The position numbers were made by a program, and so were the translations under genes. Below, in pieces: positions 1 to 31,200 of a stretch of 64,000 nucleotides of DNA. Below the pieces are notes generated by a model. The model ran no database searches. It saw only the letters and a list, made by a program, of their open reading frames with translations, and was not told the DNA's origin. The stretch is from Mytilus trossulus. Lineage: Eukaryota. Location of the stretch: the NCBI RefSeq assembly GCF_036588685.1, contig NC_086381.1, forward strand, positions 52,328,001 through 52,392,000. Direction: 5' to 3'. Numbering within the stretch: position 1 is the stretch's first letter; every line of letters begins with the position of its first letter.

Positions 1-89
1 TAGTCGAACAGTGAAATCAAGTACTGTTAACTCTTAAATTTTTAAATCTTTTGATAATTTTGAAATAATTTGTAATAATTTTCATTTAG

Positions 90-3000
90 GTATTGGAACT
101 TTGAGAGTTTTGATTCAAGTTGGAAACAAGTACACAGAGATTTGGAAACAATCCAGAAACCAAGGCAACAAATGGATTCAGGCTACAGTAGATATTGGTA
201 GAGTAGCCCAACCATTCAGTGTAAGTAAATAGTCCTTAAAATATATCCTTTTAAAAAATGTATGCTGGTTATAAAGTTATCTACACTTGTATGCAAATTT
301 GTTTGCCATTGCATAACATCACAAAAATTCCTGTAAAATTTGAAATAACACAATTTAAAAAATTTGATGTCACAATTAAAAAGTGATTGTTGCTTTACGT
401 CAAAAGGAAATTCTAAGAAGGTCTTAGGTCATTCAAAAACAAAATTCAGATAAATACCAAAAATGTAAATATGTTTATTCCATTGTTATAAGCAAACATA
501 TTTTTACATTTAACATATTATATTTTCCATTATGCTTTGTATTTAGCAATCATGCTGTACCTGAAATAGTAAAAAAAATTATACTTATAGTTGGCATATA
601 TAGATAGCTTTTTTTTTATATTTATAGTTGGCATACAGAGCTAGCATTTTTTGATTTTTTTTATAGTTGGCATATAGAGCTACCAGAACTTTTAATGTGC
701 GTGGAGACATAGCTCTTGATGACGTTCAACTGATGAACTGTAACTTCCCTGCAGTACAGCAATCATGTCTGTCCAATCAGTTCAGGTGTACCAGAGGAGC
801 TTGTGTATCTAAAAATACCCTGTGTGACTTCACTGATGATTGTGGTGACAATAGTGATGAAGGAAATTGTGGTAGGTTATCCCCCTTAGTAAAGATTACC
901 TCCCTTTCTTTACAGTCATGTGACTTCACTGATGACTGTGGTGACAATAGTGACAAAGGAAATTGTGTTAGGTTATCTCCCCTTATTAAAGATTACCTCC
1001 CTTTCTTTACAGTCATGTGACTTCACTGATGACTGTGGTGACAATAGTGACGAAGGAAATTGTGGTAGGTTATCTCCCCTTAGTAAAGATTACCTCCCTT
1101 TCTATACAGTCATGTGACTTCACTGATGACTGTGGTGACAATAGTGACGAAGGAAATTGTGGTAGGTTATCTCCCCTTATTAAAGATTACCTCCCTTTCT
1201 TTACAGTCTTTTTCAGTGCATTTTATAAATAATAAGAAGATGTGATATGAGTGCTAATGATACAACTCCCCATTCAAGTCACAATATATAAACATTTAAC
1301 AATTATAGGTCAAAGTAGACCATGTATATATTGTAGTATCTGTGTCAAGTTTATAAGATTTGACAGTGAAGTAGGTCTTTTTTGGACATGAGTAGGTTAT
1401 TTCCTTTACTTAGGTACAGGCTGGTTTAGTGTTCATATCACATTCTCTATCTTCTTATAGACCATAATAATACATCAAAGCAACAAAAAAACAAAGACAT
1501 CTTGAAATTAATGAATTCAAATTATTTTTTTAATTGCGTTTTCAAATTTTTTAGATTTAGATACATATAGTTAAGTGTTTCTATGTTTGTACTTTAGCTA
1601 AATTTCCTGGAAGATGTGATTTTGAAACCAGTTTGTGTGGGTGGAGTCAAGACACAACTGATACATTTGATTGGATAAGAGCCACTGACCATACAGCTAG
1701 TGGTGGTACTGGACCATCCAGAGATCACACTAAAGGCACTGCTAACGGTAAGATTATTTTGATGAAAAAGACAGTTAACATTTGATGGAAGATTTTTTAT
1801 ACAGATATTTTACAAATGTATCAGTACAGAGTATCATTGAATTTCAATGAGTAACTATGGATTATGTTAACTCGTCATTCTGTATTTACTAAAAGGTTCT
1901 TTTTTTTCCCATAGGATATTACATGTTCATAGAATCATCAAGACCCAGGAAGCCTGGAGATGTAGCAAGAATTGTCAGTCCAACATTAGCCATCAATACA
2001 AACAATCAAAATTCAGTCTGCACAGTAAGTTTTATTTACCTGGGTTCAAATTGATGAGATAAAAAATTGTCAATTTGAATCAAACTGATGCAGTGTTTTA
2101 CTACGAGAGTATATAATAAGACCACTATAAGACCACTAATGCCAGATTAGTCATGTTACAGTTATACTTATTTATGTGTAAATGTGTGGATAAAAGCATA
2201 AACTAGAGTACTGTGGATTCATTAATATTCGTTGGATACCAATTTTGGTGGATTTCGTCGGACATGGAGAACCACGATTTCAAATGTTCAACGAAATACA
2301 AATTTTGTAAAGGAATGAGTGTAGACTTTACCAAAACCACAAAATTAAATATCCAAGAATATGTAAGTTTTCCTCAAACCACGAAAATTTGTACCCACGA
2401 AAATAAATGTATCCACAGTATATATTTTTGTAATAAATTGATAACATATTCATCTACTTTCTCCCTTTTAAGAATTGAATGCTTCTTTTTGTAACTCCAT
2501 TGTGGTGTAAAAGCGTTGACCAAAGTACATTTCCGCACTTCATTCTAAAAATGTGCCCACGTCAACTCTTTTACAACCCTATGAAGTTACAAAAACAGGC
2601 ATTCAATACTTATAATTACATTTTTTAGCTAGGATAATGAAAACACGATTTTTATCAAGTTTATATTTAATTTACCTGTGCACTTTTTGTGGGACATGTG
2701 TTAATGAATGATAAATTTTATTGTGTTATGATGTTCATTAAGGAATAACGCGAGATTGCAGTGTAGCCAATCAGAATAACCTATTGTAATGTAATTATGA
2801 CAATTTGATCAATATTCTTTAGTTAAATTTTAAGAATGAAACTATTTTTAATGGATGAATATCATAATCTAATCAAGGTTTATATTTCTATTTGTACAGA
2901 GTTCACTTTGTTTTTAAAATTAGCCATAATTTTCATTTTATAATTGAGGCAGTCTTAATAAAAAAAAGTGCTGCTCCTTTGCCTTTTCTGTTATTTTTTG

Positions 3001-6000
3001 CTGTGTATTTACTCATTTTATGTCATATATGGGTACTCCATATCATATTCTATCATATAATTATTGTCTCTGATTACAGTTCAGACTATACTACCACATG
3101 TTTGGAAGTGGAATTGGAACGCTGAATGTCTACACCAGAACAGCTGTTGGAGGACCACTTAAAAAGATATGGACCAAGTCTGGAAATGTTGGAGATTTCT
3201 TTGAAAGGAGAGATATACAGATACTTGAAAATAATCCATTCCAGGTTAGATCATTGTGAATTCCAATCACTGTAAATTCAGAAATTATTGTGTACATTTA
3301 TCAATGAGTTTTTTCAAGAAGGACAAAAATGTGAGTTTTAATTATTGTGATTTTTAAAAAATCTGCATACTCTATGTTTCAGTTTTCAGAATGCAAGTTC
3401 TTTTTATTACAATACTCACCCAGTCAACGTATTTGCATTGATTAAAACCTCACAATAATTTCTGAATTTGCAATAGTTCATTTTCATGCATTATCCATAA
3501 CTCAACCTTTGGCTCTTAACTTTTTTTATTCTCTGACTGCTGTAGAAGGTGTTTTTTGTTTCTCAGTTGATCTGTTTATTTGTCAATCCATACATTCCTC
3601 ATCAATATATTCTTGTTTGAAAATCACCAAAGATGTTGAAGAACTGCTGTTGAATGTGCTGAAATTTTCCAAAAATCTTATTTTAAGTACACTGTATTTT
3701 AAAATTTATATATGAACAAACAAGCTGTGTTTCTTTTGTAGATTTTTTTTTATATGACGATGATTTCCTTCTTGTTCATTTCTTTCCATTTTTCAGGTGT
3801 TAGTAGAAGGCGTGGTTGGTAGTAGTTACAAAGGAGATATTGCTATTGATGATTTATCATTCTCTGATGGATGTATGCTAAGTTCAGGTAAATATAGAAA
3901 AATAAAATTGTTTTATTGAAGGTGCAACTATGTAATCGTTCCTCTCAACAACAAAAATTGTGAAAAAATAGTCAACCATTTTTTTGAGTGCACCATTTAA
4001 AATTTTTTGGAAGAATTGTTTTGTATTTGATGATCTAGTTCAAATATTGAAAAACCAAAAATCTTATACAAAGCTGACGAGCTGAAACAACAAAAAGGAC
4101 CAAAATAATACTTCATTTAATGATATAATTATATTTTACAAATAATATGTGAATTCCATCTAATATCAATAAAAATGTGCCAATGAATTTTTTTTGTAAT
4201 CAGAGCTTAAAAGAAACTTTTTTTTTCAAAACTTTTTGTTTCTTTTCATTTCATTGTATTTCTGGATCATTTTAGCAGGTACAATACCAACTGGTACCCC
4301 AGGACCAGCAACCACTCCTAATCCATGTGGAGCTAACAGTACTCAGTGTGTCACTGGAACAAAATGTATACCTAATTTCCAATTGTGTGATTTTACATAC
4401 CAGTGTGCAGACAAATCAGATGAAGCTAACTGTGGTGAGTGGTCTCCCTTTGAATAATACAAATTTTACAATCTTACATTTGAATTACTCCAAAGATGGT
4501 TTACTCCCCCTTACTTATTACAAATAACTGAAAATGACATATCACTTACTCAGAAGATGGTAGTCTCCCCCTTGTTTATAACAAATTACCCAAATTAACA
4601 TTTCAATTACTCAGAAGATTTTCGACCCCCCTGCATATTACAATTAACTGGAAAATTACATTTCACTTACTCGAAAGATTGGTGTCTCCCTCTTGTTTAT
4701 TACAAATTACCCAAAATCGACATAACTCACTCAGAATATGGTTGTTTCACCTCTTTTATTACAAATTACCCAAAATGACATTTCACTAATATATAAAATG
4801 GTTGTCTCACCCTTGTTTACTACAAATTACCCAATATGACATTTCAATAACTCAGACGAGATCAACTGAAGATGTGTGGGTGTACCCCCTTGTTTATGTA
4901 TTTGTAATTGAAGATGGTTGTCTCTCCATGTTCTGTTCCCCTTTCTATCATTTGTGATGATATTTTTTAGAATAGATTTTCTTTAGATAAAACAAAATGT
5001 AATTCTAGTTCAATTTTGTTTTTGAAAAAAGTAAAAACACAAAAATACTGAACTCCGAGGAAAATTCAAAATCAAAAGGCAAAATCAAAAGTCCAAACAC
5101 ATCAAACGAATGGATAACAACTGTCATATTCCTGACTTGGTACATGCATTTTCTAAATGGTGGATTGAACCTGGTTTTATAGCTAGCTAAACCTCTCACT
5201 TGTATGACAGTCCCATCAAATTCCATTAAATTGTCAACGATGCATGAACAAAACAAACATACTCAAAGAATAAAAATGTCAAAAATAGGGGTACAGCAGT
5301 CAATATTGTGTTATCATCTTAATATCACTATAAAAACAACAAATTTGACGAAGAAGCACAAAAAGGCCTACATCAAATTTAACATACTCATTTTGCTTTT
5401 CTTATACGACTTTGAATACATTTCGATATATTTAATTGCACAATGTGTAAGAGATATTGTTGAAAATGTAAGTTAGATATTTTTATGCTTAAGAAATAAA
5501 GTTCATACATTTTAATTTGTATACAGGAACATGTAATTTTGAGAAAAATCAATGTGGCTGGCAAGATTCCAGTACTGGACGTTACAATTGGCATATCTTC
5601 CAAGGTTCTTCTCCAGGAACAGGAGGCCCATCGAGTGATCACACCACAAATAACGCACAAGGTCAGTATGATAGTACATGGTATGCTTAGCTTTTTTTAT
5701 CCTGATTATGCAAATTCTTTTATTTAAGATGGTACATAACAATACAGGGAGATAACTCTGTTAGATTCAACTGAACGTTTTAATGCTTATCTATTGTTAA
5801 GGAAAAAATAAGCTTTTCAGTGATCATTATTTGTGTTTGTCAAACTACTATATAACTAATGAAAATTTTCCAATAAAGTGTATTGGTCAAGTTTATTGAA
5901 ATTTGTATATTTTTTCAAAGCAAATATTTTGTCAAAATTTTATGAAAAAGTAAAGGAATCAAATTAATTTTAGGTGGTACCTAACACTACAGGGAGATTA

Positions 6001-9000
6001 CTCTGTAAAATCAGCTAAATGTTTTAATTACGTTGGTTTGTAAAGGGAATATTAAGCTTCTCAATGATCAAAATTGTTGTTTGTAAAACTGCTATATAAC
6101 CAGTGTAATATTTCTGATAAAACGGTTGGTTTGAAATTTTTGAAATTTTTATATACTTGTTAAAGGGTCAAAGTAAATACTTTGTCAAAATTTTATGAAA
6201 ATTAAACGAGCCAAATTAATTTTAGTGAAAGTGTTGGGTACCACCTTAAGTTGAGGTGTTTAGTATTACCTTAAAAACCTGTAATAGAATAATAAAAAAA
6301 AGCTGAAGTTTATGTAAAGATTTCAAAAGATCAGGAATTTCCTATCAAACAAATTCTGATAGAGTCAGTTTTATAAAGTTATATTTGGAATGTTTAACTT
6401 TCAGGACATTACATGTTGGTGGAGGGTTCTACTGGTACCTTTTTCAGCAGAGCCTACCTGGACACACCTGTATTCCAAGCCACTGCTGCCAGTTGTCATA
6501 TCACATTTTGGTTCAATATGAATGGGGCTTTGGCAGGTAATTGAATTAAAGATTTTACGTTTTAAAATTCTGCGTTTGCTGTAGATGTGATTCTCAATCA
6601 GATACTTTAAAATGCAACATTTTCTGAAATCATTATTATTTGAGTTTTGTATCATGTTTCAACAATCACAAAAATTAATGCACACTAAAATTCTTGAGTT
6701 TACAGTAATTTTAATAACATTAGTCATACACATTACTGTAAATTCAGAAATAATTATTGCTTGCAAATATTATTGCGATTTTGTTATTTTGGACTTGAAC
6801 GCGATTTTAATTTTTGTGATATTGAGAAAAATCATGTTTAATTCATATAAAAAAATTCAAAATGTGAGTTTAAATTAATGCGACTATAACACTGTCAGAT
6901 TTTTCGCAATAATAAAAACCTCACACAAATTTCTGAATTTACAGTATAATGATATTGTTATAGGCAATGTTCAGTTGTATGTCATCAACTCTAATAAACC
7001 TACCCAAAGAACTTTGATCTGGTACAAGACTGGTTCCCAAGGCATTGGATGGAAGAATGCCTCAGCAGACATTGGTCAACTTTCAGCAGGTTACAAGGTT
7101 AGTTTTATGGGTGAAAGTTCACCAGTCTGAAAATGAGGCTGTACATTGTTGATGCACACTATATGTATAAATTCATTTTTTAGATTTAATTATAAAACAA
7201 TAAATTCATGTATAAATTTCAAACTCTTATTGTTTATCTTAATTATATTGTCAGCACTAGGTTTTTGCATGTAAAAATTATTTGATTTTTTAAAGTTTTG
7301 AAACCAATGTGATAGTATTGTTTATTTATAGATAAAGACAATTTAAAGGCATAATGTATTAAGTTTAATTGCTTTCTTGTAATTGAATATAGTTTTTATA
7401 CCTGAACATATTTTTGTTTTACAGCTAAGATTCCAAGCCTTCCCTAACAAAGGCTTTGGTTCCTTGTCGAAGGTACCTAATGCAGATATAGCAATTGATG
7501 ATGTCAAATTTGTAGACTGTAGTCCCACACAAATCTTCACGGATAAAAGTAAGAAAAAACATAATATGTAAACATGTTACTGTTCAGAGAAAATACATAT
7601 GCTGCAAAAGTATTTATAAAACTTATGGAAAGATGAACAATGGGGTAAATGATAGTGAGACAGAAATCCAACAACACAGGTTAATAAAAGAAACCTCTAG
7701 AGATCAACAGACATCCCATCAAGGTCAATTGAAGTATAGACAAAAAATAACACCACTTTTCCAGCTGTGCATAATTATAAATTCAGAGTCTTATAAAGCT
7801 AGAAATAATTTTATGAGAACTTTCCATTTTATTTTTAATTTTATTCATCTATATTAAATTCAAAAGGAATGAAAAGCAATTGAAAAAAAGGACAAGCACT
7901 TACATAGATCCTAACTTTAGACAAGCTCTTTAACATACATGAAGGTTACATAGTTTTACAGGTATAAAAAAAGAAGATGTGGTATGATTGCAATGAGACA
8001 ACTCTCCACAAGAGACTAAATGACACAGAAATGAACAACTATAGGTCAGCGTACTGCCTTCTAAAATGAGGAAAGCTCATACCACATGGTCAGGAACTCT
8101 ACTTCCAAATATGGATATAGTTTTATTTTAGTGGTTTAGAATTCCTCCTGATTTTCTAAAGTACTTTTAAGTGTAACTGTTGATTGACATTACACAGACA
8201 TTGTTATTTATTTAGATATCTAGTCATATCTATTTAATTGATTTTCAATTTTTCATATTGTCTTTTTATTCGCCTTTTCAGAATCTAAAGGACTATGGGT
8301 AATCTCATTGTTCGTACACCAAAATGAAAAAAGGGTTATGTCATTGGTTGAATTTCAATTGTTTAGAACGTTTGTCAACAATCACAACCTTTTGGTGAAC
8401 GCTTTTGAAATTATTACCCAGAATGCATTAGATTCAAAAACGGCGAATTCCATAGTGTAAAAATAGTTCTATATCTCCTGCTGAAAATTAACTGCTGAAA
8501 TATTTGTTTTGTAGCTGTGAACTGTACATTTGAATCTGATTTCTGTGGATATTTCCAAGATACAAAGGATGATTTTGATTGGACTAGAACTAATCAAGCT
8601 TCACCAACCAGAGGGACGGGTCCAGATAGAGATCACACAACTGGAACAGGTGAAATCAGGATAATGCATGCATCTTAACTTGTCCTGGAGGAGGGTGGGA
8701 CAGGGCCTCCTAGGCCAAGTGGTCTAAGTAGTTCTACTTCTGTAATCACTAGCCAGTCAAAACTGAGGTTGTGAATTTGAGGAGGTGTCCAGATTCCGAA
8801 GTCCCAGGCTTTAAAACACGAAATCCTGAAGTCCTAGATTTAAATAATTAAAATCCTGACATCCGGAAATTCTAAAAAGAATTCCGGTATCCTGAAAAGG
8901 TCAATCTTGAAATCCTGAGCTTAAAATCCCAGAGTCTCAATAAACGTCCTAACCCCCCCTCCTCAATCAATCAATCTTAATTTGTCAATCTTATAAATGT

Positions 9001-12000
9001 TCAAATCTAAAATTGGTTTTCTTCTTCAATATGAAAGTTTATTTTCATTTTTTTCAATGAAACAGTTTAAACATGTTTTATTATTCAAAATGACAAATGG
9101 ATTCAACACAAGTTTTTAACGTAGTCCTCTAATATTTCTATGGGATGTGATATGAAGATGGTTCCATAATTAATTCCATTTTTAAATACAGAAGTATCTT
9201 TTTAACTGCAGCCTTGTTGCACTGTAATAGAGAAAATTGTCCTGAAAGTTTAAGTTGAAATGGCATTTATTTTCCACACTACGATATGTATTAAGTGCAG
9301 TATGCTTTCTGTTGGCCATTTATATTTGTGGTATTCAAATAAGCCAAATTACAAAAATTGATTAGCTTGTAGTATCAATTATTTTATTTTGGTGCATTAC
9401 TCAGTGTATATACTTTCTGAGATCTTACGTTATTTGTTGGTTGAAACATTTTTTTTATATTTAGGATATTATATCTATATTGAGACTTCCTCACCAAGAC
9501 ATCAGGGTGATCGAGCTGTATTATCTACTGGTATCCAGCAACCTGAAGCAAACGGTGTATGTTTAACATTCTGGTATCACATGTTCGGTGCCCATGTCAA
9601 CACGCTGAATGTCTACCAACAAACTACTGACGGAAACAAGTCAATGATCTGGACCACATCTAAAACACAAGGAAATGTATGGAGAAAAGCCACCAGGACG
9701 GTTACCAGTCAAACACCATTTAAGGTTTGTATGCTTAATAGTACACACAAAATAGAGGTCAATCTTAATAGTACACACTAAATGGAGGTCAATCTTAATA
9801 GTACACACTAAATGGAGGTCAATCTTAATATTATACACTAAATAGAGGTCAATCTTAATAGTACACACTAAGTAGAGGTCAATGTTAATAGTACACACTA
9901 AATAGAGGTCAATCTTAATGCTACACACTAAATAGAGGTCAATCTTAATAGTATACACTAAATAAAGGTCAATGTTAATAGTATACACTAAATAGAGGTC
10001 AATCTTAATGGTACACACTAAATAGAGGTCAATCTTAATAGTACACACAAAATAGAGGTCAATGTTAATAGTACACACTAAATGGGGGTCAATCTTAATA
10101 GTACACACAAAATAGAGGTCAATCTTAATAGTACACACTAAATGGGGGTCAATCTTAATAGTACACACTAAGTAGAAGTCAATCTTAATAGTACACACTA
10201 AATAGAGGTCAATCTTAATAATACACACTAAAAAGAGGTCAATGTTAATAGTACACACTAAATAGAGGTCAATTTCAATAGTATACATTAAATAGAGGTC
10301 AATCTTAATAGTACACACTAAGTAAAGGTCAATGTTAATAGTACACACTAAATAGAGGTCAATCTTATTAGTATACACTAAATGGAGGTCAATCTTAATA
10401 GTACACACTAAATGGGGGTCAATCTTAATAGTACACACAAAATAGAGGTCAATCTTAATAGTACACACTAAATGGGGGTCAATCTTAATAGTACACACTA
10501 AGTAGAAGTCAATCTTAATAGTACACACTAAATAGAGGCCAATCTTAATAATACACACTAAAAAGAGGTCAATGTTAATAGTACACACTAAATAGAGGTC
10601 AATTTCAATAGTATACATTAAATAGAGGTCAATCTTAATAGTACACACTAAGTAAAGGTCAATGTTAATAGTACACACTAAATAGAGGTCAATCTTAATA
10701 GTATACACTAAATGGAGGTCAATCTTAATAGTACACACTAAGTAGAGGTCAATGTAAATAGTATACACGAAATAGAGGTCAATGTTGATAGTACACACTA
10801 AATAGAGGTCAATCTTAATAGTACACACTAAATAGAGGTCAATCTTAATAGTACACACTAAGTAGAGGTCAATGTAAATAGTATACACTAAATAGAGGTC
10901 AATCTGAATAGTACACACTAAAGAGAGGCCAATTTCAATAGTACACACTAAATAGAGGTCAATCTTAATAGTACACACTAAATAGAGGTCAATCAACTAA
11001 CACTTAATTACATTCATACAAAACTGCAAAATTTAATATGAAGCATTGATTCGTGTTTCAATTCTTTTGGGATAAGTATTTTTTTCAAATTCATGTAAGA
11101 CAGAAGAAAAAACACTTTATGCCATATTCATCTTTACATTACATATCTTATTTTTGGTCTTGTGTATGTAAGTTTACATGATGACTTTGTAATTACAGTA
11201 ACCTGTCTACTTTACATATCTTATATTTGGTCTTGTGTATGTAACTTTACATGATGACTTTGTAATTACAGTAACCTGTCTACTTTACATATCTTATATT
11301 TGGTCTTGTGTATGTAAGTTTCCATGATGACTTTGTAATTACAGTAACCTGTCTACTTTACATATCTTATATCTTATATTTGAAATTGATGACTATGTAG
11401 CTATATCATCACTTTTTTTTACAGATCCTGTTTGAAGGTGTTGTAGGTCTTAGTTGGCAAGGAGACATAGCTCTGGACGATATCAGCATGGTTAATGACC
11501 AGTGTCCACCAACAAGTAATTAAAAGTTCTAAAGACCCATTATTGAATTGTATAACTCAAATTTGCTAGTTTTGATAAATTGAGATATCATATGAAAAAA
11601 AATAATTCCAAGATATTTTTATCCTCATGCATGATGATGCTGTATGGTCAGGCGAATTAAGTTTCACCCTGGTTAATTTCATACATCCTGAAATTGGTTT
11701 CTGTTCTGTAAATAAACCCATCATATATACTAGGACTAAATTTAGTATACGCCAGAAGCGCGTTTCATCTACAAAAGACTCATCAGTGACGCTCGAATCC
11801 AAAAAGGTTAAAAAGGCCAAATAAAATACGAAGTTGAAGAGCATTGAGGACCAAAATTCCTAAAAGTTTTGCCAAATAAAGCTAAGGTAATCTATGCCTG
11901 AGGTAGAAAAGCCTTAGTATTTCAAAAAATTCTAAAATTTGTAATTAGTCAATTTATAAATATAACAATATCAATGACAATTCATGTCAGCACAAAAAAA

Positions 12001-21000: not shown

Positions 21001-22261
21001 TTTTTTTTATTAATTGCTTACATATAAAACTTCTTCTTTTTTTTTAATATGAAGGTTACTACATGTACATTGAGTCATCCAGACCAAGGTTACCAGGTAA
21101 TAAAGCCAGACTATTAACTCCTAAATATCCAGCAACCAATGGGAAGTGCTTAACATTCTACTATCACATGTATGGAAATGGTATCGGCACATTGAATATC
21201 AAAATGTTCCAACAAGGACAGTTTGTACCACCAATCTGGACAAGGAGCGGTAACCAAGGCAACATCTGGAGAATTGGACAAGTCAATTTAGTAACAGCTT
21301 CTACATTCCAGGTATTTTACTTTTGTAAGGGATAAATATTCAAATGTCATATCAGAAAAAAGTTGGAGTGGATTTTTTTTAAAGGAGAATGGGGCAAATA
21401 AAAAAATGTTGAAGCATCCATCAAAAAGATACTAGATATCTATATGTTTGCCTAATTCATATTTTAGTTGTAGCTTGTAACTCCCTAAAGTGTAGGCAAA
21501 TTTCAAACAAAAACAACTCTCTTGAAAAAACCTCATCACAGATACCAGGATTAAATTTTGTATTTATTCCTGAGTTAGAAAAGCCTTAATTTTTTTTTAA
21601 ATTTAAAAGTTTTCGTAAACAGTTAATTTATAAATATGACCATTTCAATGATAATTTATATGAGCTAACTATATTATTTAGTAGAGATGGCCTTATCATC
21701 AAGCACTTTAAGATACTGTAAATTCAGAAATTATTGCATACATTTATTATTGAGAATTAGAAGAATGGAGATTATTTATTGGGATTTCTGGAAAATCTGC
21801 GTACAGTTATATGTATAAGATATCAGAATGCCAGTTTTAATTATTTCGAAACTCATTCAGTCACATTATTGACAACAATTAAAACCATGCAATCATTTCT
21901 CAATTTATAAATTTGTCAAACATTATTGTATTTTTAGGTAACATTCAAAGCAATTTGTTTGACAAATATATTTGTATTTATAGGTTGCGTTTGAAGCTAT
22001 TTATATGACAAACATTTTTGTATTTTCAGGTTGCGTTTGAAGCTGTTCGTGGTCGTACCTACTCAGGTGATATAGCTATTGATGATGTCAACATTATTGA
22101 TGGCAAATGTCCACCTCCTGGTAACTGTAACTTTGAGAAGGGACTGTGTACTTGGTCTAACGACATAATAGGAGATGATTTTGATTGGATTAGACATCAG
22201 GGAAGAACAGTTAGTTCTGGCACAGGACCAACAGCAGATCACACCATAGGCAACCAGAATG
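90..22261 (+). CDS. MALRD1-like exons 1-26 (intron-rich block: end of a MAM, LDLa-MAM-LDLa, then a run of MAM domains)
   Basis: 26 exons of 91-355 nt; ORF-track fragments such as [32 protein letters not shown] and [24 protein letters not shown] join in frame when spliced. Confidence 0.9.
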
Positions 22262-25200
22262 GTATGTTTCTAAAGTGGATTTAAGTTATTCTACTGTGGA
22301 TTCGTTTATTTTCGTGGGTACCATTATTCGTGGATTGATGAAAACTATAATTGTCGTGGATATTTGATTTCATGGTTTTTCAAATGTCTGTTTTATCACA
22401 CAACACAATTGCTCTTAGTTGAACCTTTACATTTGTGATGTCCATGTACCCACGAAATCCATGAAAATTGGTATCCAACGATTAATATTGAATCCACAGT
22501 GTGTTAATTTTTTTTAATGGCTTGCCCACATGAGCATCTGAACAGTATTACAGCATTTAAATAAAATTTCACAAATAAATGTTTTTAAAAATATTCTAAC
22601 AAGGACATAACTGTGAGAACACATACACTTATAACTGTTAACCAAACTTTGAACTATTCAAATAATAAGGAATTAACTGTAAATCTTAAAATCTGACACA
22701 TAATTGTTGTAAAAATACTTTTTTTTTTAAACAAAAATCTCTCAATTTTACTCTTTTCTCTTTCAGGAAATTACCTATACATAGAGTCATCTAAACCTCA
22801 GCTTCCAGGCCAGAAATCTCGCCTACGATCAGAAGTCCTACCTAAAACTGCAGGCAGTTGTTTTACATTCTATTACCTAATGCATGGAAACACAATGGGA
22901 ACACTTAATCTGTACAAGGATACAATAGGGTTACAGACAGTACCAAATCAACATTTTAGTCTGTTTTCTGTAACAGGGGACCAGGGACTAAAGTGGGTCC
23001 AGGGACTGGTTAACTTGACAAGTACACAAGAATACACATTGGCTTTTGAGGCAGTGATTGGAAACGGATATTCTAGTGATATAGCTATTGATGACATCTC
23101 CATACAGACTGGATTCTGTCCTGCTGTGCCACTGACCAGTAAAATGTATACCTGTACTGGTGGATCATCAATCTCAGCCCTTAAAGTATGCGACTTTGTC
23201 AAAGATTGTCCACAAGGGGATGATGAGAACAACTGTGGAAACTGTACATTTGATGCTTCACAATGTGGATGGATTGATTCAAGTGTGGGATCCTTCAGAT
23301 GGACTAGACATAACAATGGAACAGAAACAGCCAACACTGGACCGCAGAGTGACCACACCACAGGAACAGCAAAGGGTTACTACATGTATGTGGATGCAAA
23401 TTTCGGCAGAAGATATGCATTTGCAACCTTACAGACTCCTACTCTGAGAAAATCAGCAGCAACCTGCCAGATGTCCTTCTGGTATCATATGTATGGACGT
23501 TCTATTGGATCACTTACAGTGTCCAAGGTCATTCAAGGTCAATCTACTGTTCTACAATATTTGTCAAGAAATAAGGGAAATGCATGGCAGCAAGCTACAA
23601 TAAATATTGGCAGAGAGCCGAGAGATTTTATAATACAGTTCATGGCTAGAAGAAGTTTGTCTGTTCTTGGAGACATTGCTATTGATGATGTAACCTTTGT
23701 GAACTGTGGACTACCCCCAATACAAGCATCATGTGGTACCAACCAGTTTAGGTGTCAAAGAGGTTCTTGTGTTGACAACACCCGACTCTGTGACTTCACT
23801 GATGACTGTGGAGACCAAAGCGATGAAACACAATGTTCAGGTTACCCATCTCGATGCTCTTTTACCAACTCATTATGTGATTGGAGTCAGGACAAGGGAG
23901 ACAACTTTGACTGGACAAGAAGAAATTCACCAACACCATCAAGAGGCACTGGACCTACCAGAGACCATACCTCTGGACTGAGAACTGGAGGGTTCGTTTA
24001 TATTGAAACATCAAGTCCAAGGAAGCCAGGTGATGTAGCTAGACTTCTGAGTACACCGTTCCAAGCAGTTTCATCTGTCTGTAATCTAGTCTTTTATTTT
24101 AATATGAATGGAAGATCCGTAGGTAATCTTAATGTTTACATGAGAACAAATGGCGGCAGTACTCCAGTAACTAAACTTCTTACCAAGACAGGCAATCGTG
24201 GGGATATATGGGACAGAGCCAGTATAAATCTAATCAGTCAGTATCCATTCCAGATTATCATTGAAGCAACAGTGGGTGGACTTGTCTATGGAGACATAGC
24301 AATTGATGATGTGGTATTTAGTAAAGGATGTGTCAAGGCAGGAAATGTCATCTTCCCAACAGCTGTTACTATTCCTGCGACTGTGCCGACACCTAATCAA
24401 TGTTCAAATGGACAAGGTAACTTCAAAGCCTGTGGATCATGTGACTTTGAGTTGTCAACTTGTGGCTGGACCGATTTAAGTAATGGAAGATATAATTTTA
24501 GTCGACACTCAGCTACTCAAAACCAGGGAGCAATAGTTGGACCCCCAGTGGACCACACCAAGGGATCACCCTCTGGATACTATGTATTTGTAGAAGGTTC
24601 ACAAGGAGTATTCTTCAGTAAGGCATTATTCCAAAGTCAACTGCTTCCCCCATCAGCCAGCACTTGTGAGATGTATTTCTACTTTGACATGTTTGGTCCA
24701 AATGTTGGAACTCTGGTTGTCTCTGCTAATATAAATGGAACAATAACAAACTTAAACGTAATAAGAGGTGACCAAGGAAGAGGCTGGCACCTAGGAAAAG
24801 CATACATTGGACAGAAACTTGGAGCCATCAGTTCTCCATTTAGAATGCAACTGAGTGTCCTTCCTGCAAGGTCATTTGCAGCCTCCACTACAAATGATGT
24901 TGGAATTGATGATATTTCATTTGTAAACTGTGACCAGAATGTAGCACCACCTAATATAAGTTGTAACTTTGATAGTGGAATATGTAACTGGACCCAAGCT
25001 ATCGATGATGACTTCCAGTGGACCTTAAAAAGTGGTTCCACACCATCCCCAGGAACTGGACCACCTTCAGATCATACATCAGGCAAGGGCCAATACATAT
25101 ATATTGAAACATCTTCTCCAAGGAAGAGAGGAAACAGCGCTGTAGTAGACAGTCCAGTGTTGCCACCCACACCAGCCCAGGGTAACTGTCTTTCATTCTG

Positions 25201-28200
25201 GTACTACATGTATGGACCAACTATTGGAAATTTACAAGTTTTTGTCACATCATCATCAAGAAGGTCTCTGTTCTGGTCTAAAGCAGGAACACAACCTGAC
25301 CAATGGGTTCAAGCCACCAGAACTATTAATTCAACAACAGATTTCAGAATGTCTATAACTGGAACTGTTGGAAAAGGACCCCAGGGTGATATAGCAATAG
25401 ATGATCTTACCTACACTGCTGGACCTTGTCCATTAAAACCAGGATGTGACTTTGAAAGTGGTTTCTGTGATTGGCAACAGAGTACAGCTGATGATTTCAA
25501 TTGGTCAATAGGTGTAAATGGTACAACATCAAGGGGAACTGGTCCCCCATTCGATCACACATATGGATCCAGCTCAGGTCACTATGCTTATATTGAAACT
25601 TCAGGACAACAACCTAATAACAGAGCAGTACTTACAACTCCTACAATTCTAGGACAGGCATACCAGGCTAAGTGTATGCAGTTCTGGTATCACATGTATG
25701 GCACAACAATTGGGTCTTTAAATATCTATATCCAAAATAATGGATCACAAGCACGTCAAATTTGGTCAAGGACAGGAAACCAACAAAACATTTGGAGGCA
25801 TGGACAAGTCAACATAAACAATTACGGACCTTACAAAGTTTTAATTGAAGGGGTCAGAGGTCTTAGTTACCAGGGTGATATTGCCATTGACGATGTTGTT
25901 ATTACTGATGGTTCGTGTTCTCCTGCAGGAACTTGTAATTTTGAACAGGATACCTGTGGATGGACCAATGCTTTGGTAGGAGATAATTTTGATTGGCAGA
26001 GAGATTATGGTGGAACAAGAAGTTCTAGGACTGGACCTAATGTAGATCATACCCTAGGAACTGTTCAAGGTCATTATATGTACATTGAAACATCAGGTAG
26101 TGGAAGAACCATTGGTGAGAAGGCATGGTTGGTCAGTGATATTATGAAACCAATAACCAGTGGCTGCATGAATTTCTGGTACCACATGTATGGAGCAGGT
26201 GTTGGAAAATTGAATATGTACAAACAGACATTTGGAACCACATCTATGAACTTAATATGGTCGTCCTCTGGTAACCATGGAAATGTATGGTTGATGTCAA
26301 CAGTTGCGGTTTCTTCTGCACAAGAGTTTAATGTGATCTTTGAAGGAGTGTATGGAGGAAATTATACTGGAGACATTGCTATTGATGATGTCAGCTTTAC
26401 AACATATGGATGTTCACAGATACCACCATCAACTACTTCAATGTACCCACCATCCACATCCAGAAGTCCATATCCACCAACAGCTATAGATTGCAACTTT
26501 GAAAATGGTATATGTTTATGGAATCAAGATCAAAATGATACATTTGATTGGTCAATGCATACAGGAGCAACCGTGTCGGCAAAAACAGGACCAATATCAG
26601 ATCACACACTTCAGAACTCAGCTGGACACTACGTTTATATAGAGGTATCAGGGAAAGCAGCCAATAGTACAGCAAGAATAATAAGTCCCAATGTCAACAT
26701 ACGTTCATCTGGTGTGTGTTTGAAGTTCTGGTACAATATGTATGGTGCTAATGTCAATAGACTGAATGTGTACTCTAGAAATGGTGGTGTGATGAGTCAA
26801 GTGTGGACTCGACTTGGAAACCAAGGTTTAGACTGGAAGTATGCTCAGGTACACATAACAAATCAAGGACTTGGTCAGCAGCTTGTGTTTGAAGGTGTGG
26901 CTGGAACTAGTTATAGTGGGGACATTGCACTGGATGATGTTACATTTAACACTGGAGACTGTCCACAGTCAACTGTATGTGATTTTGAAGATGGCCTCTG
27001 TGGTTACACACAAGATAAAAGTGATCAGTTTGACTGGACCCTACATACAGGAAGGACTAATAGTAATAGAACTGGACCTAGTGCAGATCACACTTTCCAG
27101 ACAAATGAAGGAACTTATATTTACATTGAGTCATCTTTACCTAGACATCAGAATGACAAAGCTCGACTAGACTCACCACTTTATCCACCTACTAGTGGCT
27201 CTTGTCTCAACTTCTATTACAACATGTATGGCAGAAATGTAGGAGCACTGAAAGTCTACATCAGACCAGCTGGTATCACTACCTTAGGTCGTCCTATGAG
27301 GACATTTGGACATAACCATGGAACTGACTGGTTTCCAGCTCAGCTTACTATCCAGAGTGGTACCCCATATAGGATAACATTTGAAGGGGTTATTGGTAAT
27401 GGCTATCAAGGTGACATTGCACTGGATGACATCATGCTGCGAACAGGAAGCTGTTCACCTAGAGGAAGCTGTGACTTTGAGCATGATACTTGTGAATGGA
27501 GAAACCGTGGAAATGACAAGTTTGACTGGGAGAGAGTGCATGGTAAAACTGTTACTTCAAATACTGGACCACCAGCTGATCACACTTTGAACACACAATA
27601 TGGAACTTACCTATACATAGAAGCTTCAACACCAAGAAAGCCTGGTGACAATGCTATCATTAGTTCACCATGGTTCCCTAATATTAATTCAAGCAGATGT
27701 TTAACATTGTGGTATAACATGCATGGTTCTGGGATGGGAACACTCAATATCTATAAATGGCTGCCAAGACAACAGAAACAGAAGGTCTTTTCTCTGACGG
27801 GAGAGCAAGGTACTGCATGGAAACAAGCCCAGGTGACCATACCACCCACAGCATCTGTTGGATACATTCTCTACATTGAAGCAGTTGTTGGTAGTAGTTA
27901 CCTAAGTGATATTGCTATAGACGATATATCTGTTATTGACTCCAGCTGTGCAGCAATACCCCCAACAACAACTGCATCATCATGTGCATACACATGTACA
28001 GGTGGAAATAGACAGTGTATAAGTAGTGACAAACTTTGTGACTTCAACCTAGATTGTTCTGATGGTGGAGACGAAGCACAATGTGGATATAGTTGTACAT
28101 TTGAAAATGGTCAGACATGTAAGTGGACGAACAGCTCCAAGACTTCCTTTACATGGTTAAAATTCAGAGGTGCTACTCCAGATTCCAACACTGGACCTTC

Positions 28201-31200
28201 AACAGATCATACAACAAATGGACCAAATGGATATTACATGTATGTGGATGCAAGTAATGGAGGATTTTACAACCATGCATACTTTACCAGTCCCATGTTA
28301 AAACAAGCCGCAAGCACCTGCCAAATGTCATTCTGGTATCATATGTACGGTTCAGGGATTGGAAACTTGTATGTGTTCTCCAAAACATCAGGAAGTTCAA
28401 CAAACACAAGACTTTGGAACTTGGCTGGAGATCAAGGCAACCGATGGAACCAGGCTATAGTCAGAATTGGTAGAATTGATACCAACTTCCAAATGATTAT
28501 TGATGCACGCAGATCATTCAGTACACAAGGAGATATTGCTATAGATGATATACAGTTACAGGGCTGTGGACTTCCTGCCGTTAGTACATCATGTGATACA
28601 ACTCATACTTTCCGTTGTCAGAGAGGATCATGTATATCACAGAATCGTGTTTGTGATTACACTGATGACTGCGGTGACAATACAGATGAACAGATCTCAA
28701 CCTGCAGCGCCTATCCAGGATGCAACTTTGAAACTGGCTTATGCAAATTCCAACAACTACAGGATGATGACTTTGATTGGACAAAGCGAGCAGGAACCAC
28801 TCCAACAGTAAATACTGGACCAGCAAGAGATCACACACTGAATACAAACTCTGGACAATACCTTTATATTGAAACATCTACACCTAGACAGCCAGGACAA
28901 AAGGCACGACTTGCTAGTCAATTCTTTCAAGCAGTACCAAACACTCCATATTGTACAATGAGAATATATTACTTCATGTTTGGAAAAGATGTAAATACAT
29001 TAGCAATCTATACAAGAACTGTCATAAATGGAGCACAGTTGCTGAGATACAGGAGAACAGGAAATCTAGGAGAGTACTGGGAAAGAAGGGAGATCACTGT
29101 GTCATCAACAGCACCATTCCAGTTTATTATAGAGGCAACTGTTGGTCAGTCAGCTTATAGTGACATTGCCATAGATGATATATCATTTACCACAAATTGT
29201 AGACCATACATGGGATCAGTATCAACTGTACCTGCAGGCTCTGTGACAACAGTGGCACCATCTGGTAAATGTCCTACAGGACAGTTCCAATGTACCAATG
29301 GTAAATGTATCAATGCCGCTTTAAGATGTGATTTCCTAAATCAGTGTGGTGACAATTCTGACGAACTTCAATGTCAGGAGTGTAACTTCCAATTCTCAAC
29401 ATGTGGTTGGGTAGACAAGAGTTCAGGAAGATATCAATGGGACAGACATAATGGATCCACATCTACTGGTCCTAGGACAGACCACACCTACGGCACCTCA
29501 TCCATTGGTAATTACATGTATGTGGATGCAGGCACTGGACAATCATATGGAAAAGCTGTACTAGTTGCACCACCATTTGGCAGCCTTAATTCTTTATGTC
29601 AACTTACTTTCTACTACTACAAGAACACAAATTCGGCCAATTCATCACTTCAACTCTTCTTGGTACCTGCTAATGTTCAATACAATGCAAACTTTGGTAG
29701 GATCAGAGTATGGTCAGCTTTTGGTAATCATGGTAACACTTGGAATTTGGCAACCGTTGGTATTGGCAGACGACAACCTGGATACTACCTTGTTTTGGAA
29801 TCTGTGCATTCTGGGACAGTAGATACGGCTGTTGATGACTTCCATTTTACAAACTGTGGGTTAGGTCCATCAACAACATTCTGTACAAACAATCAGTTTA
29901 CATGTGCAAGAAAATCTTGTGTCGATCTATCCTATGTATGTGACTATTCAGATGACTGTGGGGACCAATCAGATGAAAAGAATTGTACAAATTATGTTGA
30001 ACGTTGTAATTTTGAAACAGATCTTTGTAATTGGATTCAAGATGATACAGATAATTTCCAGTGGAGTTATGGACAAGGGAAAACATCAACCACTGGTACA
30101 GGTCCAGGGTCTGATCATACATATGGAACCACTGTAGGACATTATGTATACATTGAGTCCTCTTCTCCAAGGAAAATGGGAGATGCAGCCAGATTGAAGA
30201 GTCCTGTATTCTCTCAAAATTCTAATAATTGTAAAATAAGGTTCTATTATCATATGTATGGAGCTGATATTAATGCTCTCAACTTGTATGTGGAAAATTA
30301 TGAGACTGGACCAAGAAGCTTACTATGGACAAAGAATGGTTCTCAAGCTGACATGTGGATAAGAGCAGTGGTATCACTTACTAGCTCATCACCATTTAGA
30401 GTTGTAATAGAAGGGGTCAGAGGTAAAGGTTACAAAGGTGACATTGGAATTGATGATGTATCCTTCACTCCAGGATGTCAGGTAGTTTCAAGAGGGAAAC
30501 TCCCATATGTTTTTACACCCCCAGGGCCATGTGGAAAGGGCAAGTGGCAATGTACAAATAAGAATTGTATAGATTACAACAAGATGTGTGACTTTAAGAA
30601 TGATTGTGGTGACAACAGCGATGAATTGATGTGTCCTTCATCCTGTACATTCAGCAGCGGCAGCACATGTTATTGGACAAATAGTAATCCAGGAAACTGG
30701 ACAGTGACAAGCAATGGTAACCCTACACAAAATACTGGACCAAGCAGTGACCACACTTCTCCTACTACAACAAATGGAGGATATGCAGTTGCAAACAAAA
30801 TAGCCAATGGCACAAGTAATATATTCCGTTTCAATAGCCCCTTATATCATCAAGCTGGAAAGATGTGTAACTTCTCTCTGTGGTACAATATACATGGACA
30901 TGGATTTAGACAATTCCGTATTCTAATTCAATCTGGTGGCTCAGAAAGCACACTATTTTCACTTTATTATAGTGCTTTAAACAAACAAAATGGACAATGG
31001 CAACAAGCTCAAGTGGCATTACCTATTTGTGCGCAACAATTTCACATCATAGTAGAAGCCATAAGTTATGGTAGAAGAGCTGGATATGTTGCAATTGATG
31101 ATCTTCAGTTCAGTAACTGTGTAACACCCCAGTCTACAGGATCTTGTACAGCAAACCAGTACACTTGTCTCAGTGGCAACTGTGTCCCAATGAACTTGAG

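What the first reader, a model, noticed from the sequence alone, without database searches (positions are those of the whole stretch)
667..28590. A ~1,620-aa super-repeat occurs twice in one gene: once split by 25 introns, once with no introns
Seen: the spliced peptide from exon 2 into the start of the giant exon reads LDLa-MAM-LDLa-(MAM)x7-LDLa-MAM. The same order recurs at ~23730-28590, entirely inside the giant exon, with position-specific signatures: [16 protein letters not shown]; [24 protein letters not shown]; [24 protein letters not shown]; [16 protein letters not shown]; [32 protein letters not shown]; GDRAWF/GEKAWL; [20 protein letters not shown]; [18 protein letters not shown]; [26 protein letters not shown]; YTCTGG/YTCTGG; [31 protein letters not shown] third unit begins at ~28590 (FRCQRGSC), and exons 1-2 ([16 protein letters not shown]) end an earlier one. 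Copy 1 spans ~23 kb of genome; copy 2 spans ~4.9 kb. Inference: either an intragenic RNA-mediated duplication, or DNA duplication followed by cDNA-mediated loss of a whole block of introns. This gives an internal natural experiment on how a giant receptor grows.
Basis: partly seen in the sequence, partly recalled or inferred. Interest (0 to 1): 0.85.

Follow-up and report, generated by a model that had tools for sequence, protein, structure and literature searches.

The report
Ancient domain block, one copy intron-free
A giant bivalve cell-surface receptor gene holds two ancient tandem copies of a 1,620-residue block of domains, and one 10.5-kb exon, conserved across bivalves, has lost about 60 introns that the other copy keeps.

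Summary
A gene model I built independently, with 5 of its junctions validated by spliced RNA contigs, gives LDLa-MAM-LDLa-MAMx7-LDLa-MAM twice. Copy 1 (667-23701) has 25 introns. Copy 2 (23702-28561) has none. The copies are 47% identical. Position-wise pairing is the best of 362,880 possible MAM pairings.

The interpretation needs correction in three ways.
- The duplication is not recent growth. A gastropod has both copies with 1:1 domain orthology. Unit trees place copy 1 and copy 2 with rotifer and arachnid counterparts, and a mollusc-only origin is rejected (AU p=0.012).
- The intron-free block (22767-33221) does not coincide with copy 2. It starts inside MAM H of copy 1, at a conserved phase-1 intron site, and runs 4.6 kb past copy 2.
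- The same uninterrupted ORF of about 3,400-3,540 aa occurs on genomic contigs of Crassostrea and other bivalves.

The best reading is an ancient DNA duplication followed much later by mRNA-templated loss of about 60 adjacent introns. A simple retro-duplication is disfavoured.

The scan noted the giant exon before (s1-823670).

The parts
59..220 (+). Exon 1 as seen in the window: middle of MAM 'M0', the I-like last domain of an earlier partial unit.
   Evidence: HMM hit at positions 78-132. Junction 220|667. M0's best matches are I' and I. The upstream domains u25-u30 plus M0 are collinear with C to I.
667..23701 (+). Copy 1 of the super-repeat: 26 exons and 25 introns up to the giant exon, with its last 935 bp lying inside the giant exon.
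667..871 (+). Exon 2: tail of M0 plus LDLa-1.
   Evidence: junctions 220|667 and 871|1598 (phase 1).
1598..1747 (+). Exon 3: MAM A, HMM positions 1-45.
1915..2024 (+). Exon 4: MAM A, part 2.
3080..3244 (+). Exon 5: MAM A, part 3.
3797..3887 (+). Exon 6: MAM A, HMM positions 131-154, plus linker.
4276..4434 (+). Exon 7: LDLa-2. It is intact here, whereas its copy-2 counterpart is degenerate.
5527..5661 (+). Exon 8: MAM B, part 1.
6405..6536 (+). Exon 9: MAM B, part 2.
6964..7097 (+). Exon 10: MAM B, part 3.
7425..7548 (+). Exon 11: MAM B, part 4. It was missed by the HMM and found by its ADIAIDD motif.
8515..8649 (+). Exon 12: MAM C, part 1.
9465..9724 (+). Exon 13: MAM C, part 2.
11425..11515 (+). 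Exon 14: MAM C, part 3.
12393..12533 (+). Exon 15: MAM D, part 1.
13019..13284 (+). Exon 16: MAM D, part 2.
13517..13871 (+). Exon 17: end of MAM D fused with the start of MAM E. Two canonical introns are already missing here.
14438..14568 (+). Exon 18: MAM E, part 2.
15041..15173 (+). Exon 19: end of MAM E plus a Thr-rich linker. Copy 2 has a linker at the same place.
16222..16374 (+). Exon 20: MAM F, part 1.
16684..16842 (+). Exon 21: MAM F, part 2.
18157..18284 (+). Exon 22: MAM F, part 3.
   Evidence: Spliced RNA contigs, sequence read directly.
18814..18904 (+). Exon 23: MAM F, part 4.
20249..20395 (+). Exon 24: MAM G, part 1.
   Evidence: (GT..AG joint 20395|21055).
21055..21311 (+). Exon 25: MAM G, part 2.
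   Evidence: (joint 21311|22030).
22030..22261 (+). Exon 26: end of MAM G plus MAM H, HMM positions 1-45.
   Evidence: (joint 22261|22767, 0 mismatches in run X1).
22767..33221 (+). Giant exon of 10,455 bp with no intron. It holds MAM H (from HMM position 45), LDLa, MAM I, all of copy 2, then (LDLa-MAM)x7 and a final LDLa.
   Evidence: Open frame 22697-33235. Pfam result. Acceptor seen in RNA contigs. Donor 33221|33860. It is the only giant MAM-bearing ORF among the 152 MAM matches found in the genome.
23702..28561 (+). Copy 2 of the super-repeat (A' to I'), 4.86 kb, entirely inside the giant exon.
24326..24439 (+). Degenerate remnant of the LDLa between A' and B'.
   Evidence: sequence; no LDLa hit; intact in orthologs P0002, P0009 and others.
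28562..33221 (+). Tail: (LDLa-MAM)x7 plus LDLa. A-like MAMs (T1, T3, T5, T7) alternate with B/I-like MAMs (T2, T4, T6).
   Evidence: Each is 1:1 with a Pomacea domain.
33860..42609 (+). Downstream intron-split part of the gene (MAM U1-U4 with LDLa), 12 exons: 33860-34482, 35151-35319, 36517-36614, 36753-36935, 37386-37482, 38124-38264, 38678-38827, 39137-39475, 39855-39983, 40277-40414, 40954-41099, 42405-42609.
43280..45510 (+). Three further LDLa exons, at about 43280-43440, 44576-44753 and 45395-45510.
46471..49922 (+). The 3' end of the gene: EGF-like (46471-46542 and 46977-47060), transmembrane helix (48100-48201), and a cytoplasmic tail with two NPxY motifs (48871-48933 and 49872-49922).
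   Evidence: tblastn with the C-termini of the C. gigas ortholog and others.

Best explanation
The stretch is the middle of one very large gene for a type I membrane receptor made of MAM and LDLa domains. [quoted passage not shown] The protein ends in an EGF-like module, a transmembrane helix and two NPxY motifs. That ending resembles the tails of endocytic LDL-receptor-type proteins (my own knowledge, not tested).

Within the gene, a block of nine MAM and three LDLa domains (LDLa-A-LDLa-B to H-LDLa-I, about 1,620-1,650 aa) stands twice in tandem. This duplication is ancient: it predates at least the split between molluscs, rotifers and arachnids. It most likely arose at the DNA level with its introns. 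Copy 1 still carries introns at the family's canonical positions: phase 1 at MAM position ~45, phase 0 at ~131, and phase 1 at the end of an LDLa.

Much later, in an ancestor of at least the mussel, oyster and clam lineages, a contiguous stretch of 10.5 kb of coding sequence lost all of its roughly 60 introns precisely. The stretch runs from the position-45 intron site of MAM H in copy 1 to the LDLa after MAM T7. The most likely mechanism is recombination of the gene with a reverse-transcribed or RNA-templated copy of its own spliced mRNA. The edges of the block then moved a little in different lineages.

Shown: the repeat, its pairing, its age, the intron map of this species, splicing across the junction, and conservation of the giant ORF. 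Inferred: the order of events and the cDNA mechanism.
For: Repeat and pairing.
- 47.4% identity over 1,588 aa, and the position-wise pairing is the best of 362,880 permutations.
- ML tree of single domains: B-B' 100/96, F-F' 99/95, H-H' 90/88.

Age of the duplication.
- Pomacea has both units and the tail, domain by domain.
- Unit trees give a copy-1 clade of the window's species, Pomacea and Solemya (100/99), joined to rotifer and arachnid first units. They give a separate mollusc copy-2 clade.
- Forcing all mollusc units into one clade costs 45.7 lnL, with p-AU 0.012.

The introns are ancestral.
- The same positions and phases occur in copy 1, in about 30 upstream MAMs, in the downstream MAMs U2-U4, and in MAM loci on other chromosomes, whose hits begin at Pfam positions 40-44.

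Block boundaries.
- The block is 22767-33221 whereas copy 2 is 23702-28561.

Precision.
- 21 of the 25 copy-1 intron sites lie in ungapped alignment to copy 2.

Density.
- 38 introns in 6,664 nt of non-giant coding sequence predict about 60 introns in 10,455 nt (numbers).

Single transcript.
- GT..AG joints 21311|22030 and 22261|22767 appear in RNA contigs with 0 mismatches.
- A 15.4-kb contig of a close relative covers 18155 to 24048 spliced, and continues about 4.7 kb upstream.

Conservation.
- Uninterrupted ORFs of 3,340-3,546 aa with the same architecture lie on Mb-scale genomic contigs.
- The C. virginica ORF equals XP_078334348.1 residues 329-3740 at 99.7% and diverges from it exactly at both ends. 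Its 5' boundary is at the same G|YY site as in the window.

Mechanism background.
- Loss of adjacent introns together is a stated prediction of the RT model (PMC3652778).
Against: - The claim that the loss came after the duplication rests on parsimony and on the boundary mismatch, not on a lineage that has two intron-bearing copies.
- The block is internal, not 3'-biased as the classical poly-A-primed RT model predicts.
- The 3' boundary differs among lineages: LDLa end, T7 position ~114 in oysters, and T7 position ~132-135 in another clam group. Gastropod-like genomic ORFs cover only LDLa-B' to T2. More than one event is therefore needed.
- 20 of the 25 junctions are computational only.
- C, D and G do not pair in the single-domain tree.
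Confidence: 0.7

Rival explanations
1. Piecemeal loss. The giant exon grew by many separate intron losses, either small cDNA conversions or genomic deletions, that accumulated side by side over a long time. There was no single large conversion.
For: - The 3' edge differs among lineages.
- Gastropod-like genomic ORFs P0102 and P0106 stop at LDLa|B' and after T2.
- Single canonical introns are missing elsewhere in the gene: D|E and G|H are fused, upstream MAMs u3, u23 and u24 are affected, and U1 shares an exon with its LDLa.
Against: Not one of about 60 expected introns survives over 10.5 kb, while both flanks keep one intron per about 175 nt. The 5' edge is identical in mussel, oyster and clam-type ORFs.
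Confidence: 0.15
2. One complex RNA-mediated event. A cDNA that switched template between the two similar LDLa modules (before A and before T1) carried H(C-terminal part)-LDLa-I-[A to I]-T1 to T7 and recombined into the gene. This would create the second copy and the intron-free block together.
For: It explains in one step why the block starts inside H of copy 1 and ends after T7. The LDLa modules before A' and before T1 share the FRCQRGSC motif.
Against: The duplication is shared with rotifers and arachnids. Yet gastropod-like genomic ORFs show boundaries at canonical intron sites inside the block, and the 3' edges vary. Those introns would have to be re-gained at ancestral positions.
Confidence: 0.07
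3. Simple intragenic retro-duplication. A processed cDNA of A to I was inserted in frame after I, and that insert is copy 2.
For: Copy 2 has no introns, whereas copy 1 has 25.
Against: The intron-free interval is 22767-33221, not 23702-28561. The end of copy 1 (H C-terminal part, LDLa, I) and the seven tail MAMs also lack introns, so at least two more block losses would be needed.
Confidence: 0.05
4. Intron gain. The array was originally intron-free, and copy 1 and the flanks gained their introns later.
For: None specific. Tandem repeats that duplicate exon-intron junctions show that the locus is structurally active.
Against: The same positions and phases recur in about 40 MAM domains of this gene and in unlinked MAM genes. 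Sister domains A/A' and the others imply that the common ancestor already had these introns.
Confidence: 0.03

Closest known systems
[quoted passage not shown]
   Same: These are orthologs. They are 42-53% identical over about 3,400 aa, with the same domain order and 1:1 domain correspondence. In C. virginica a single genomic ORF covers residues 329-3740.
   Different: The database gene models are shorter (4,165-5,712 aa). None is described as having an internal super-repeat or a giant exon. The oyster exon ends inside T7, not after the following LDLa.
Vertebrate MALRD1 (Diet1)
   Same: It has alternating MAM and LDLa domains in one large protein: nine of each, 236 kDa (PMC8804323).
   Different: It has no runs of seven MAMs. 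It is far smaller than this gene, which has more than 5,700 aa in the window alone plus 30 or more MAMs upstream. Orthology was not tested, and its function in FGF15/19 signalling cannot be transferred.
mRNA-mediated (reverse-transcriptase model) loss of adjacent introns
   Same: The absence of a contiguous run of introns is precise and in frame. Simultaneous loss of neighbouring introns is the model's stated prediction (PMC3652778).
   Different: The scale is about 60 introns over 10.5 kb. The clusters tabulated in PMC3652778 come from genes that lost a few introns each. The block is internal rather than at the 3' end, and it has an intron-bearing paralogous copy in the same gene as an internal control.
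Processed retrocopies and retrogenes
   Same: An intron-free copy of an intron-bearing sequence.
   Different: It lies in frame inside the parent gene. Its limits do not match the intron-free interval, and it shows no trace of an insertion.

Membership tests
[quoted passage not shown] | Many MAM (PF00629) and LDLa (PF00057) domains in one chain | tested here: met
   Pfam finds 18 MAM (2,082 bits) and 10 LDLa in the giant exon. There are 30 MAM in the window model.
[quoted passage not shown] | Collinear similarity to named members over the whole length | tested here: met
   42-53% identity with 97-100% coverage to the Crassostrea and Pomacea proteins, and domain-by-domain correspondence.
[quoted passage not shown] | C-terminal EGF-like module, single transmembrane helix and NPxY tail, as in the oyster ortholog | tested here: met
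   tblastn of ortholog C-termini hits 46471-49922, including a hydrophobic helix and two NPxY motifs. No dedicated TM predictor was run.
mRNA-mediated (RT-model) intron loss | Introns were present ancestrally at the missing sites | tested here: inconclusive
   This is supported by paralogy: the same sites and phases occur in copy 1, both flanks and unlinked MAM genes.
mRNA-mediated (RT-model) intron loss | Loss is precise, with no indel at the former junction | tested here: met
   21 of 25 sites are ungapped within +/-3 aa in the copy 1 / copy 2 alignment.
mRNA-mediated (RT-model) intron loss | Adjacent introns are lost together | tested here: met
   There are no introns in 10,455 nt, where about 60 are expected from the flanking density. 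Simultaneity itself is not testable here.
mRNA-mediated (RT-model) intron loss | 3' bias of the loss | tested here: not met
   At least 20 introns remain downstream of the block. The block is internal.
mRNA-mediated (RT-model) intron loss | Gene is expressed in the germ line | not tested
   The tissue of the RNA runs is coded and unknown.
Intragenic retro-duplication | The intron-free interval coincides with the duplicated segment | tested here: not met
   The intron-free interval is 22767-33221 and copy 2 is 23702-28561.
Intragenic retro-duplication | Insertion hallmarks (poly-A remnant, target-site duplication) | not testable with these tools
   The copies are 47% identical and older than the protostome radiation, so such marks would have been erased.

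The most novel reading that the evidence does not exclude
The second copy and the intron-free block were made together by one RNA-mediated event. A template-switched cDNA of the gene's own mRNA recombined into the locus in an early bilaterian or protostome ancestor. Copy 2 would then never have had introns in any phylum, and the introns seen at its edges in some lineages would be later gains.
Probability: 0.07. Interest if true: 0.8.

Novelty: new member of a known kind. Interest (0 to 1): 0.5.

Why it matters
The locus is an unusually clean and large example of block intron loss. About 60 neighbouring introns are gone from the middle of a gene that keeps one intron per roughly 175 nt on both sides. 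An intron-bearing paralogous copy of the same domains sits in the same transcript as an internal control. The resulting 10.5-kb exon is conserved in mussels, oysters and clam-type genomes.

This gives a concrete system for three questions:
- How long a tract an RNA-templated conversion can cover.
- Whether such giant exons are then held by selection.
- How their edges drift over time.

It also shows that the two-unit architecture of this receptor family is ancient. That corrects the idea that the gene is currently growing.

Tried and rejected
I therefore made no intron maps of the Crassostrea, Haliotis, Pomacea or amphioxus genes. I used uninterrupted ORFs on genomic contigs as a proxy instead.
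- The careful PMSF unit tree did not finish in two runs. I used its quick version and a finished LG+G4 tree.
- The single-domain ML tree could not resolve C, D and G. The permutation test on alignment scores did.
- The MAM HMM missed exon 11. It was found by a motif search.
- Literature searches for a giant exon or intron loss in this family found nothing specific. One search failed on term length.
- The 451-aa minus-strand ORF at 9641-10996 was rejected as an artefact of a 30-bp minisatellite.
- The reading of a 'third full unit at 28590' was rejected, because the tail is (LDLa-MAM)x7.
- The joined spliced protein was used only inside local scripts, for alignment and trees. It was not sent to any database search. 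Only the giant exon was searched, by reference.

Full report
WHAT IS THERE

The window is G000:C9:52328001-52392000 of a 1.3-Gb genome. Named relatives place it among bivalves, and its nearest named relative is Crassostrea. My scripts label the species 'Mytilus' for convenience only; I did not verify the species.

One open frame, 22697-33235 (3,512 codons), dominates the window. Pfam finds 18 MAM and 10 LDLa domains in it. I built HMMs from those domains and ran them on all stop-to-stop fragments. They show MAM and LDLa pieces on the + strand from position 59 to about 45,500. The C-termini of orthologs then locate an EGF-like module, a transmembrane helix (48100-48201) and two NPxY motifs (48871-48933, 49872-49922). 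The window therefore holds the 3' two thirds of one very large type I receptor gene.

GENE MODEL

A junction finder scored each candidate by GT/AG, reading frame, splice-site strength and similarity of the joined peptide to the giant exon. It gave 26 exons before the giant exon and 12 after it. Together they form a 5,706-aa model without a stop codon. Exon 11 (7425-7548) had to be found by motif.

Spliced contigs of public RNA runs confirm five junctions, and the finder had ranked each of them first: 18284|18814, 18904|20249, 20395|21055, 21311|22030 and 22261|22767. Run X1, from the same organism label, shows 21156-21308 | 22027-22260 | 22766-24050 in one contig with 0 mismatches. Run X5, a close relative, has one 15,385-nt contig that covers 18155 to 24048 spliced. 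That contig has 4,760 nt upstream of this point and about 8.5 kb beyond it.

The intron-rich part and the giant exon are therefore in one transcript.

THE REPEAT

Copy 1 is LDLa, A, LDLa, B-H, LDLa, I (667-23701). Copy 2 has the same order (23702-28561). The two units are 47.4% identical over 1,588 aligned residues.

In a 9x9 matrix of global alignment scores, the pairing A-A' through I-I' is the single best of 362,880 permutations. It is also the best of 5,040 permutations for the inner seven MAMs, and any register shift lowers the mean score. A maximum-likelihood tree of the single domains supports:
- B-B' at 100/96
- F-F' at 99/95
- H-H' at 90/88
- I with I' at 83
- A with A' in one clade

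C, D and G remain unresolved in that tree.

First, the module between A' and B' is a decayed LDLa in this genome, although it is intact in orthologs. Second, what follows copy 2 is (LDLa-MAM)x7 plus LDLa, with A-like MAMs alternating with B/I-like MAMs. It is not a third seven-MAM unit.

Upstream of the window there are about 30 more intron-split MAM domains within 80 kb, and MAM hits reach 106 kb upstream. The last seven of these (u25-u30 and M0) are collinear with C to I; the identity permutation ranks first or second of 5,040.

INTRONS

Copy 1 MAMs share a phase-1 intron at HMM position ~45 and a phase-0 intron at ~131, and LDLa modules end with a phase-1 intron. The same sites recur in the upstream MAMs, in U2-U4 downstream and in MAM loci on other chromosomes, whose matches start at Pfam positions 40-44. 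These introns are therefore ancestral to the domain family in this genome.

The giant exon starts exactly at the position-45 site of MAM H, which belongs to copy 1. It ends at the phase-1 site after the LDLa that follows T7.

Outside the giant exon the model has 38 introns in 6,664 nt of coding sequence. At that density about 60 introns would be expected in 10,455 nt, and there are none. Of the 25 copy-1 intron sites, 21 lie in ungapped alignment to copy 2, so the absence is precise. In the whole-genome scan for PF00629, this is the only MAM-bearing open frame longer than 311 aa.

AGE OF THE DUPLICATION

The Pomacea protein (5,712 aa) has both units and the tail. Its domains match A to I, A' to I' and T1 to T7 one by one.

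The unit pattern LDLa-M-LDLa-Mx7-LDLa-M occurs in 79 places among the retrieved proteins. It occurs twice each in a spider and a rotifer, and it is also present in echinoderms and amphioxus.

Trees of whole units (about 1,650 columns) show the following (quick PMSF tree; finished LG+G4 tree):
- Copy 1 of this species groups with Pomacea unit 1 and Solemya (100/99).
- That group joins rotifer and arachnid first units.
- Copy 2 sits in a mollusc clade of bivalves plus gastropods.
- The mollusc copy-2 clade is next to the deuterostome units.

Holding all mollusc units together as one clade is rejected (delta lnL 45.7, p-AU 0.012). The duplication therefore predates the protostome radiation sampled here. 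It is a conserved trait of the family, not recent growth.

AGE OF THE GIANT EXON

Many hits are unnamed proteins of 3,340-3,546 aa from ENA or Logan assemblies. They share the architecture M (from HMM 44)-L-M-L-M-L-Mx7-L-M-(L-M)x7(-L). Several lie on contigs of 0.3-3.6 Mb, so they are genomic ORFs.

- P0011 is C. virginica. It equals XP_078334348.1 residues 329-3740 at 99.7% without gaps and departs from it exactly at both ends. That is what a genomic ORF does when it reads into the flanking introns. Its 5' end is the same G|YY site as in the window.
- P0013 is C. gigas.
- P0132 (72% identity) is a closer relative on a 1.1-Mb contig.
- P0009, P0010, P0012 and P0015 form another bivalve-like clade at 50-52% identity. 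The cluster of P0010 contains a fragment filed under a Thiodiazotropha MAG, which hints at a lucinid host (inference only).
- P0021 branches below bivalves plus gastropods in the unit tree and has the full block. Its source is unknown.

The 3' edge is not fixed. It is the LDLa end in the window's species, in P0009-type ORFs and in P0021. It is T7 position ~114 in oysters, and T7 position ~132-135 (a canonical site) in P0023, P0028 and P0031. Gastropod-like genomic ORFs (P0102 and P0106, 51% identical to Candidula) cover only LDLa-B' to T2. The block is therefore at least as old as the mussel/oyster/clam split, and its edges have moved since.

MECHANISM

A simple retro-duplication predicts that the intron-free interval equals the duplicate. 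It does not: the interval is 22767-33221 and the duplicate is 23702-28561.

Intron gain in copy 1 is contradicted by the shared sites across paralogs.

The most economical reading is a DNA duplication with its introns, followed by recombination with a spliced-RNA-derived template that erased a long run of adjacent introns. This pattern is the stated prediction of the reverse-transcriptase model (PMC3652778). A 2025 paper reports that RNA transcripts can template double-strand-break repair in human cells (PMC12065846; title and abstract only).

Not shown:
- That the loss was a single event. The variable edges argue for several events.
- That it followed the duplication in time.
- That the gene is expressed in the germ line.

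A one-step model with a template-switched cDNA would explain the odd boundaries. It conflicts, however, with boundaries at canonical intron sites inside the block in gastropod-like ORFs.

LIMITS

- 20 of the 25 junctions are computational only.
- The sources of the unnamed ORFs are inferred.
- The joined spliced protein was used only in local scripts and was not sent to any search tool.

VERDICT

The case is a large, conserved and internally controlled example of a known process, found in a known protein family. I found no description of it in the searched literature. The scan had already noted the giant exon itself (s1-823670).

Noticed in passing
window 823-1208: A 97-bp unit repeated 4.0 times (95% match) copies the last ~49 nt of exon 2 (the LDLa C-terminus) together with its GT donor and the start of the intron. 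This leaves three extra LDLa-tail-plus-donor copies in other reading frames.
   Followed up: partly
window 18854-19073: A 116-bp unit repeated 1.9 times (93%) copies the 3' end of exon 23 with its donor. RNA contigs use the first donor, at 18904.
   Followed up: partly
L003/L004, window coordinates -13910 to -12677: A 104-bp period repeated about 12 times copies the end of a MAM first exon (HMM positions 16-45). This is a third case in the same gene of a tandemly amplified exon-end and intron-start junction.
   Followed up: no
window 9734-10994: A 30-bp minisatellite of 42 copies starts directly after the donor of exon 13. It creates the spurious 451-aa minus-strand ORF at 9641-10996.
   Followed up: yes
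window 24326-24439: The LDLa between A' and B' has decayed to a Pro/Thr-rich linker in this species and its nearest relatives (P0001, P0003). It is intact in P0002 and all more distant orthologs, so this is a lineage-specific domain loss inside the giant exon.
   Followed up: partly
L003-L010 (80 kb upstream) and G000:C9 down to 52222033: About 30 further intron-split MAM domains lie upstream with only one LDLa, and MAM hits reach 106 kb upstream. Similarity to C-H peaks every third domain (u13, u16, u19, u22, u25), which suggests a 3-MAM sub-repeat.
   Followed up: partly
window 278-479; also 20488-20885, 21682-21880, 22279-22676: An interspersed repeat of about 200 bp has more than 40 genomic copies at 80-84% identity. 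Intronic stretches show very high contig depth in all runs, which points to transposable elements inside the introns.
   Followed up: no
window 46471-49922: The gene's C-terminus has an EGF-like module, a transmembrane helix and two NPxY motifs. This suggests an endocytic receptor.
   Followed up: partly
window 18100-24050, runs X15-X18: Contigs of X15 carry exons with their intron flanks and show no spliced joints, so these runs look like DNA or capture libraries. X1, X5 and X10 are spliced.
   Followed up: no
window 33860-34482: The exon after the giant one (623 nt) also holds a whole MAM (U1) plus an LDLa without internal introns. This is a smaller intron-free island next to the block.
   Followed up: no
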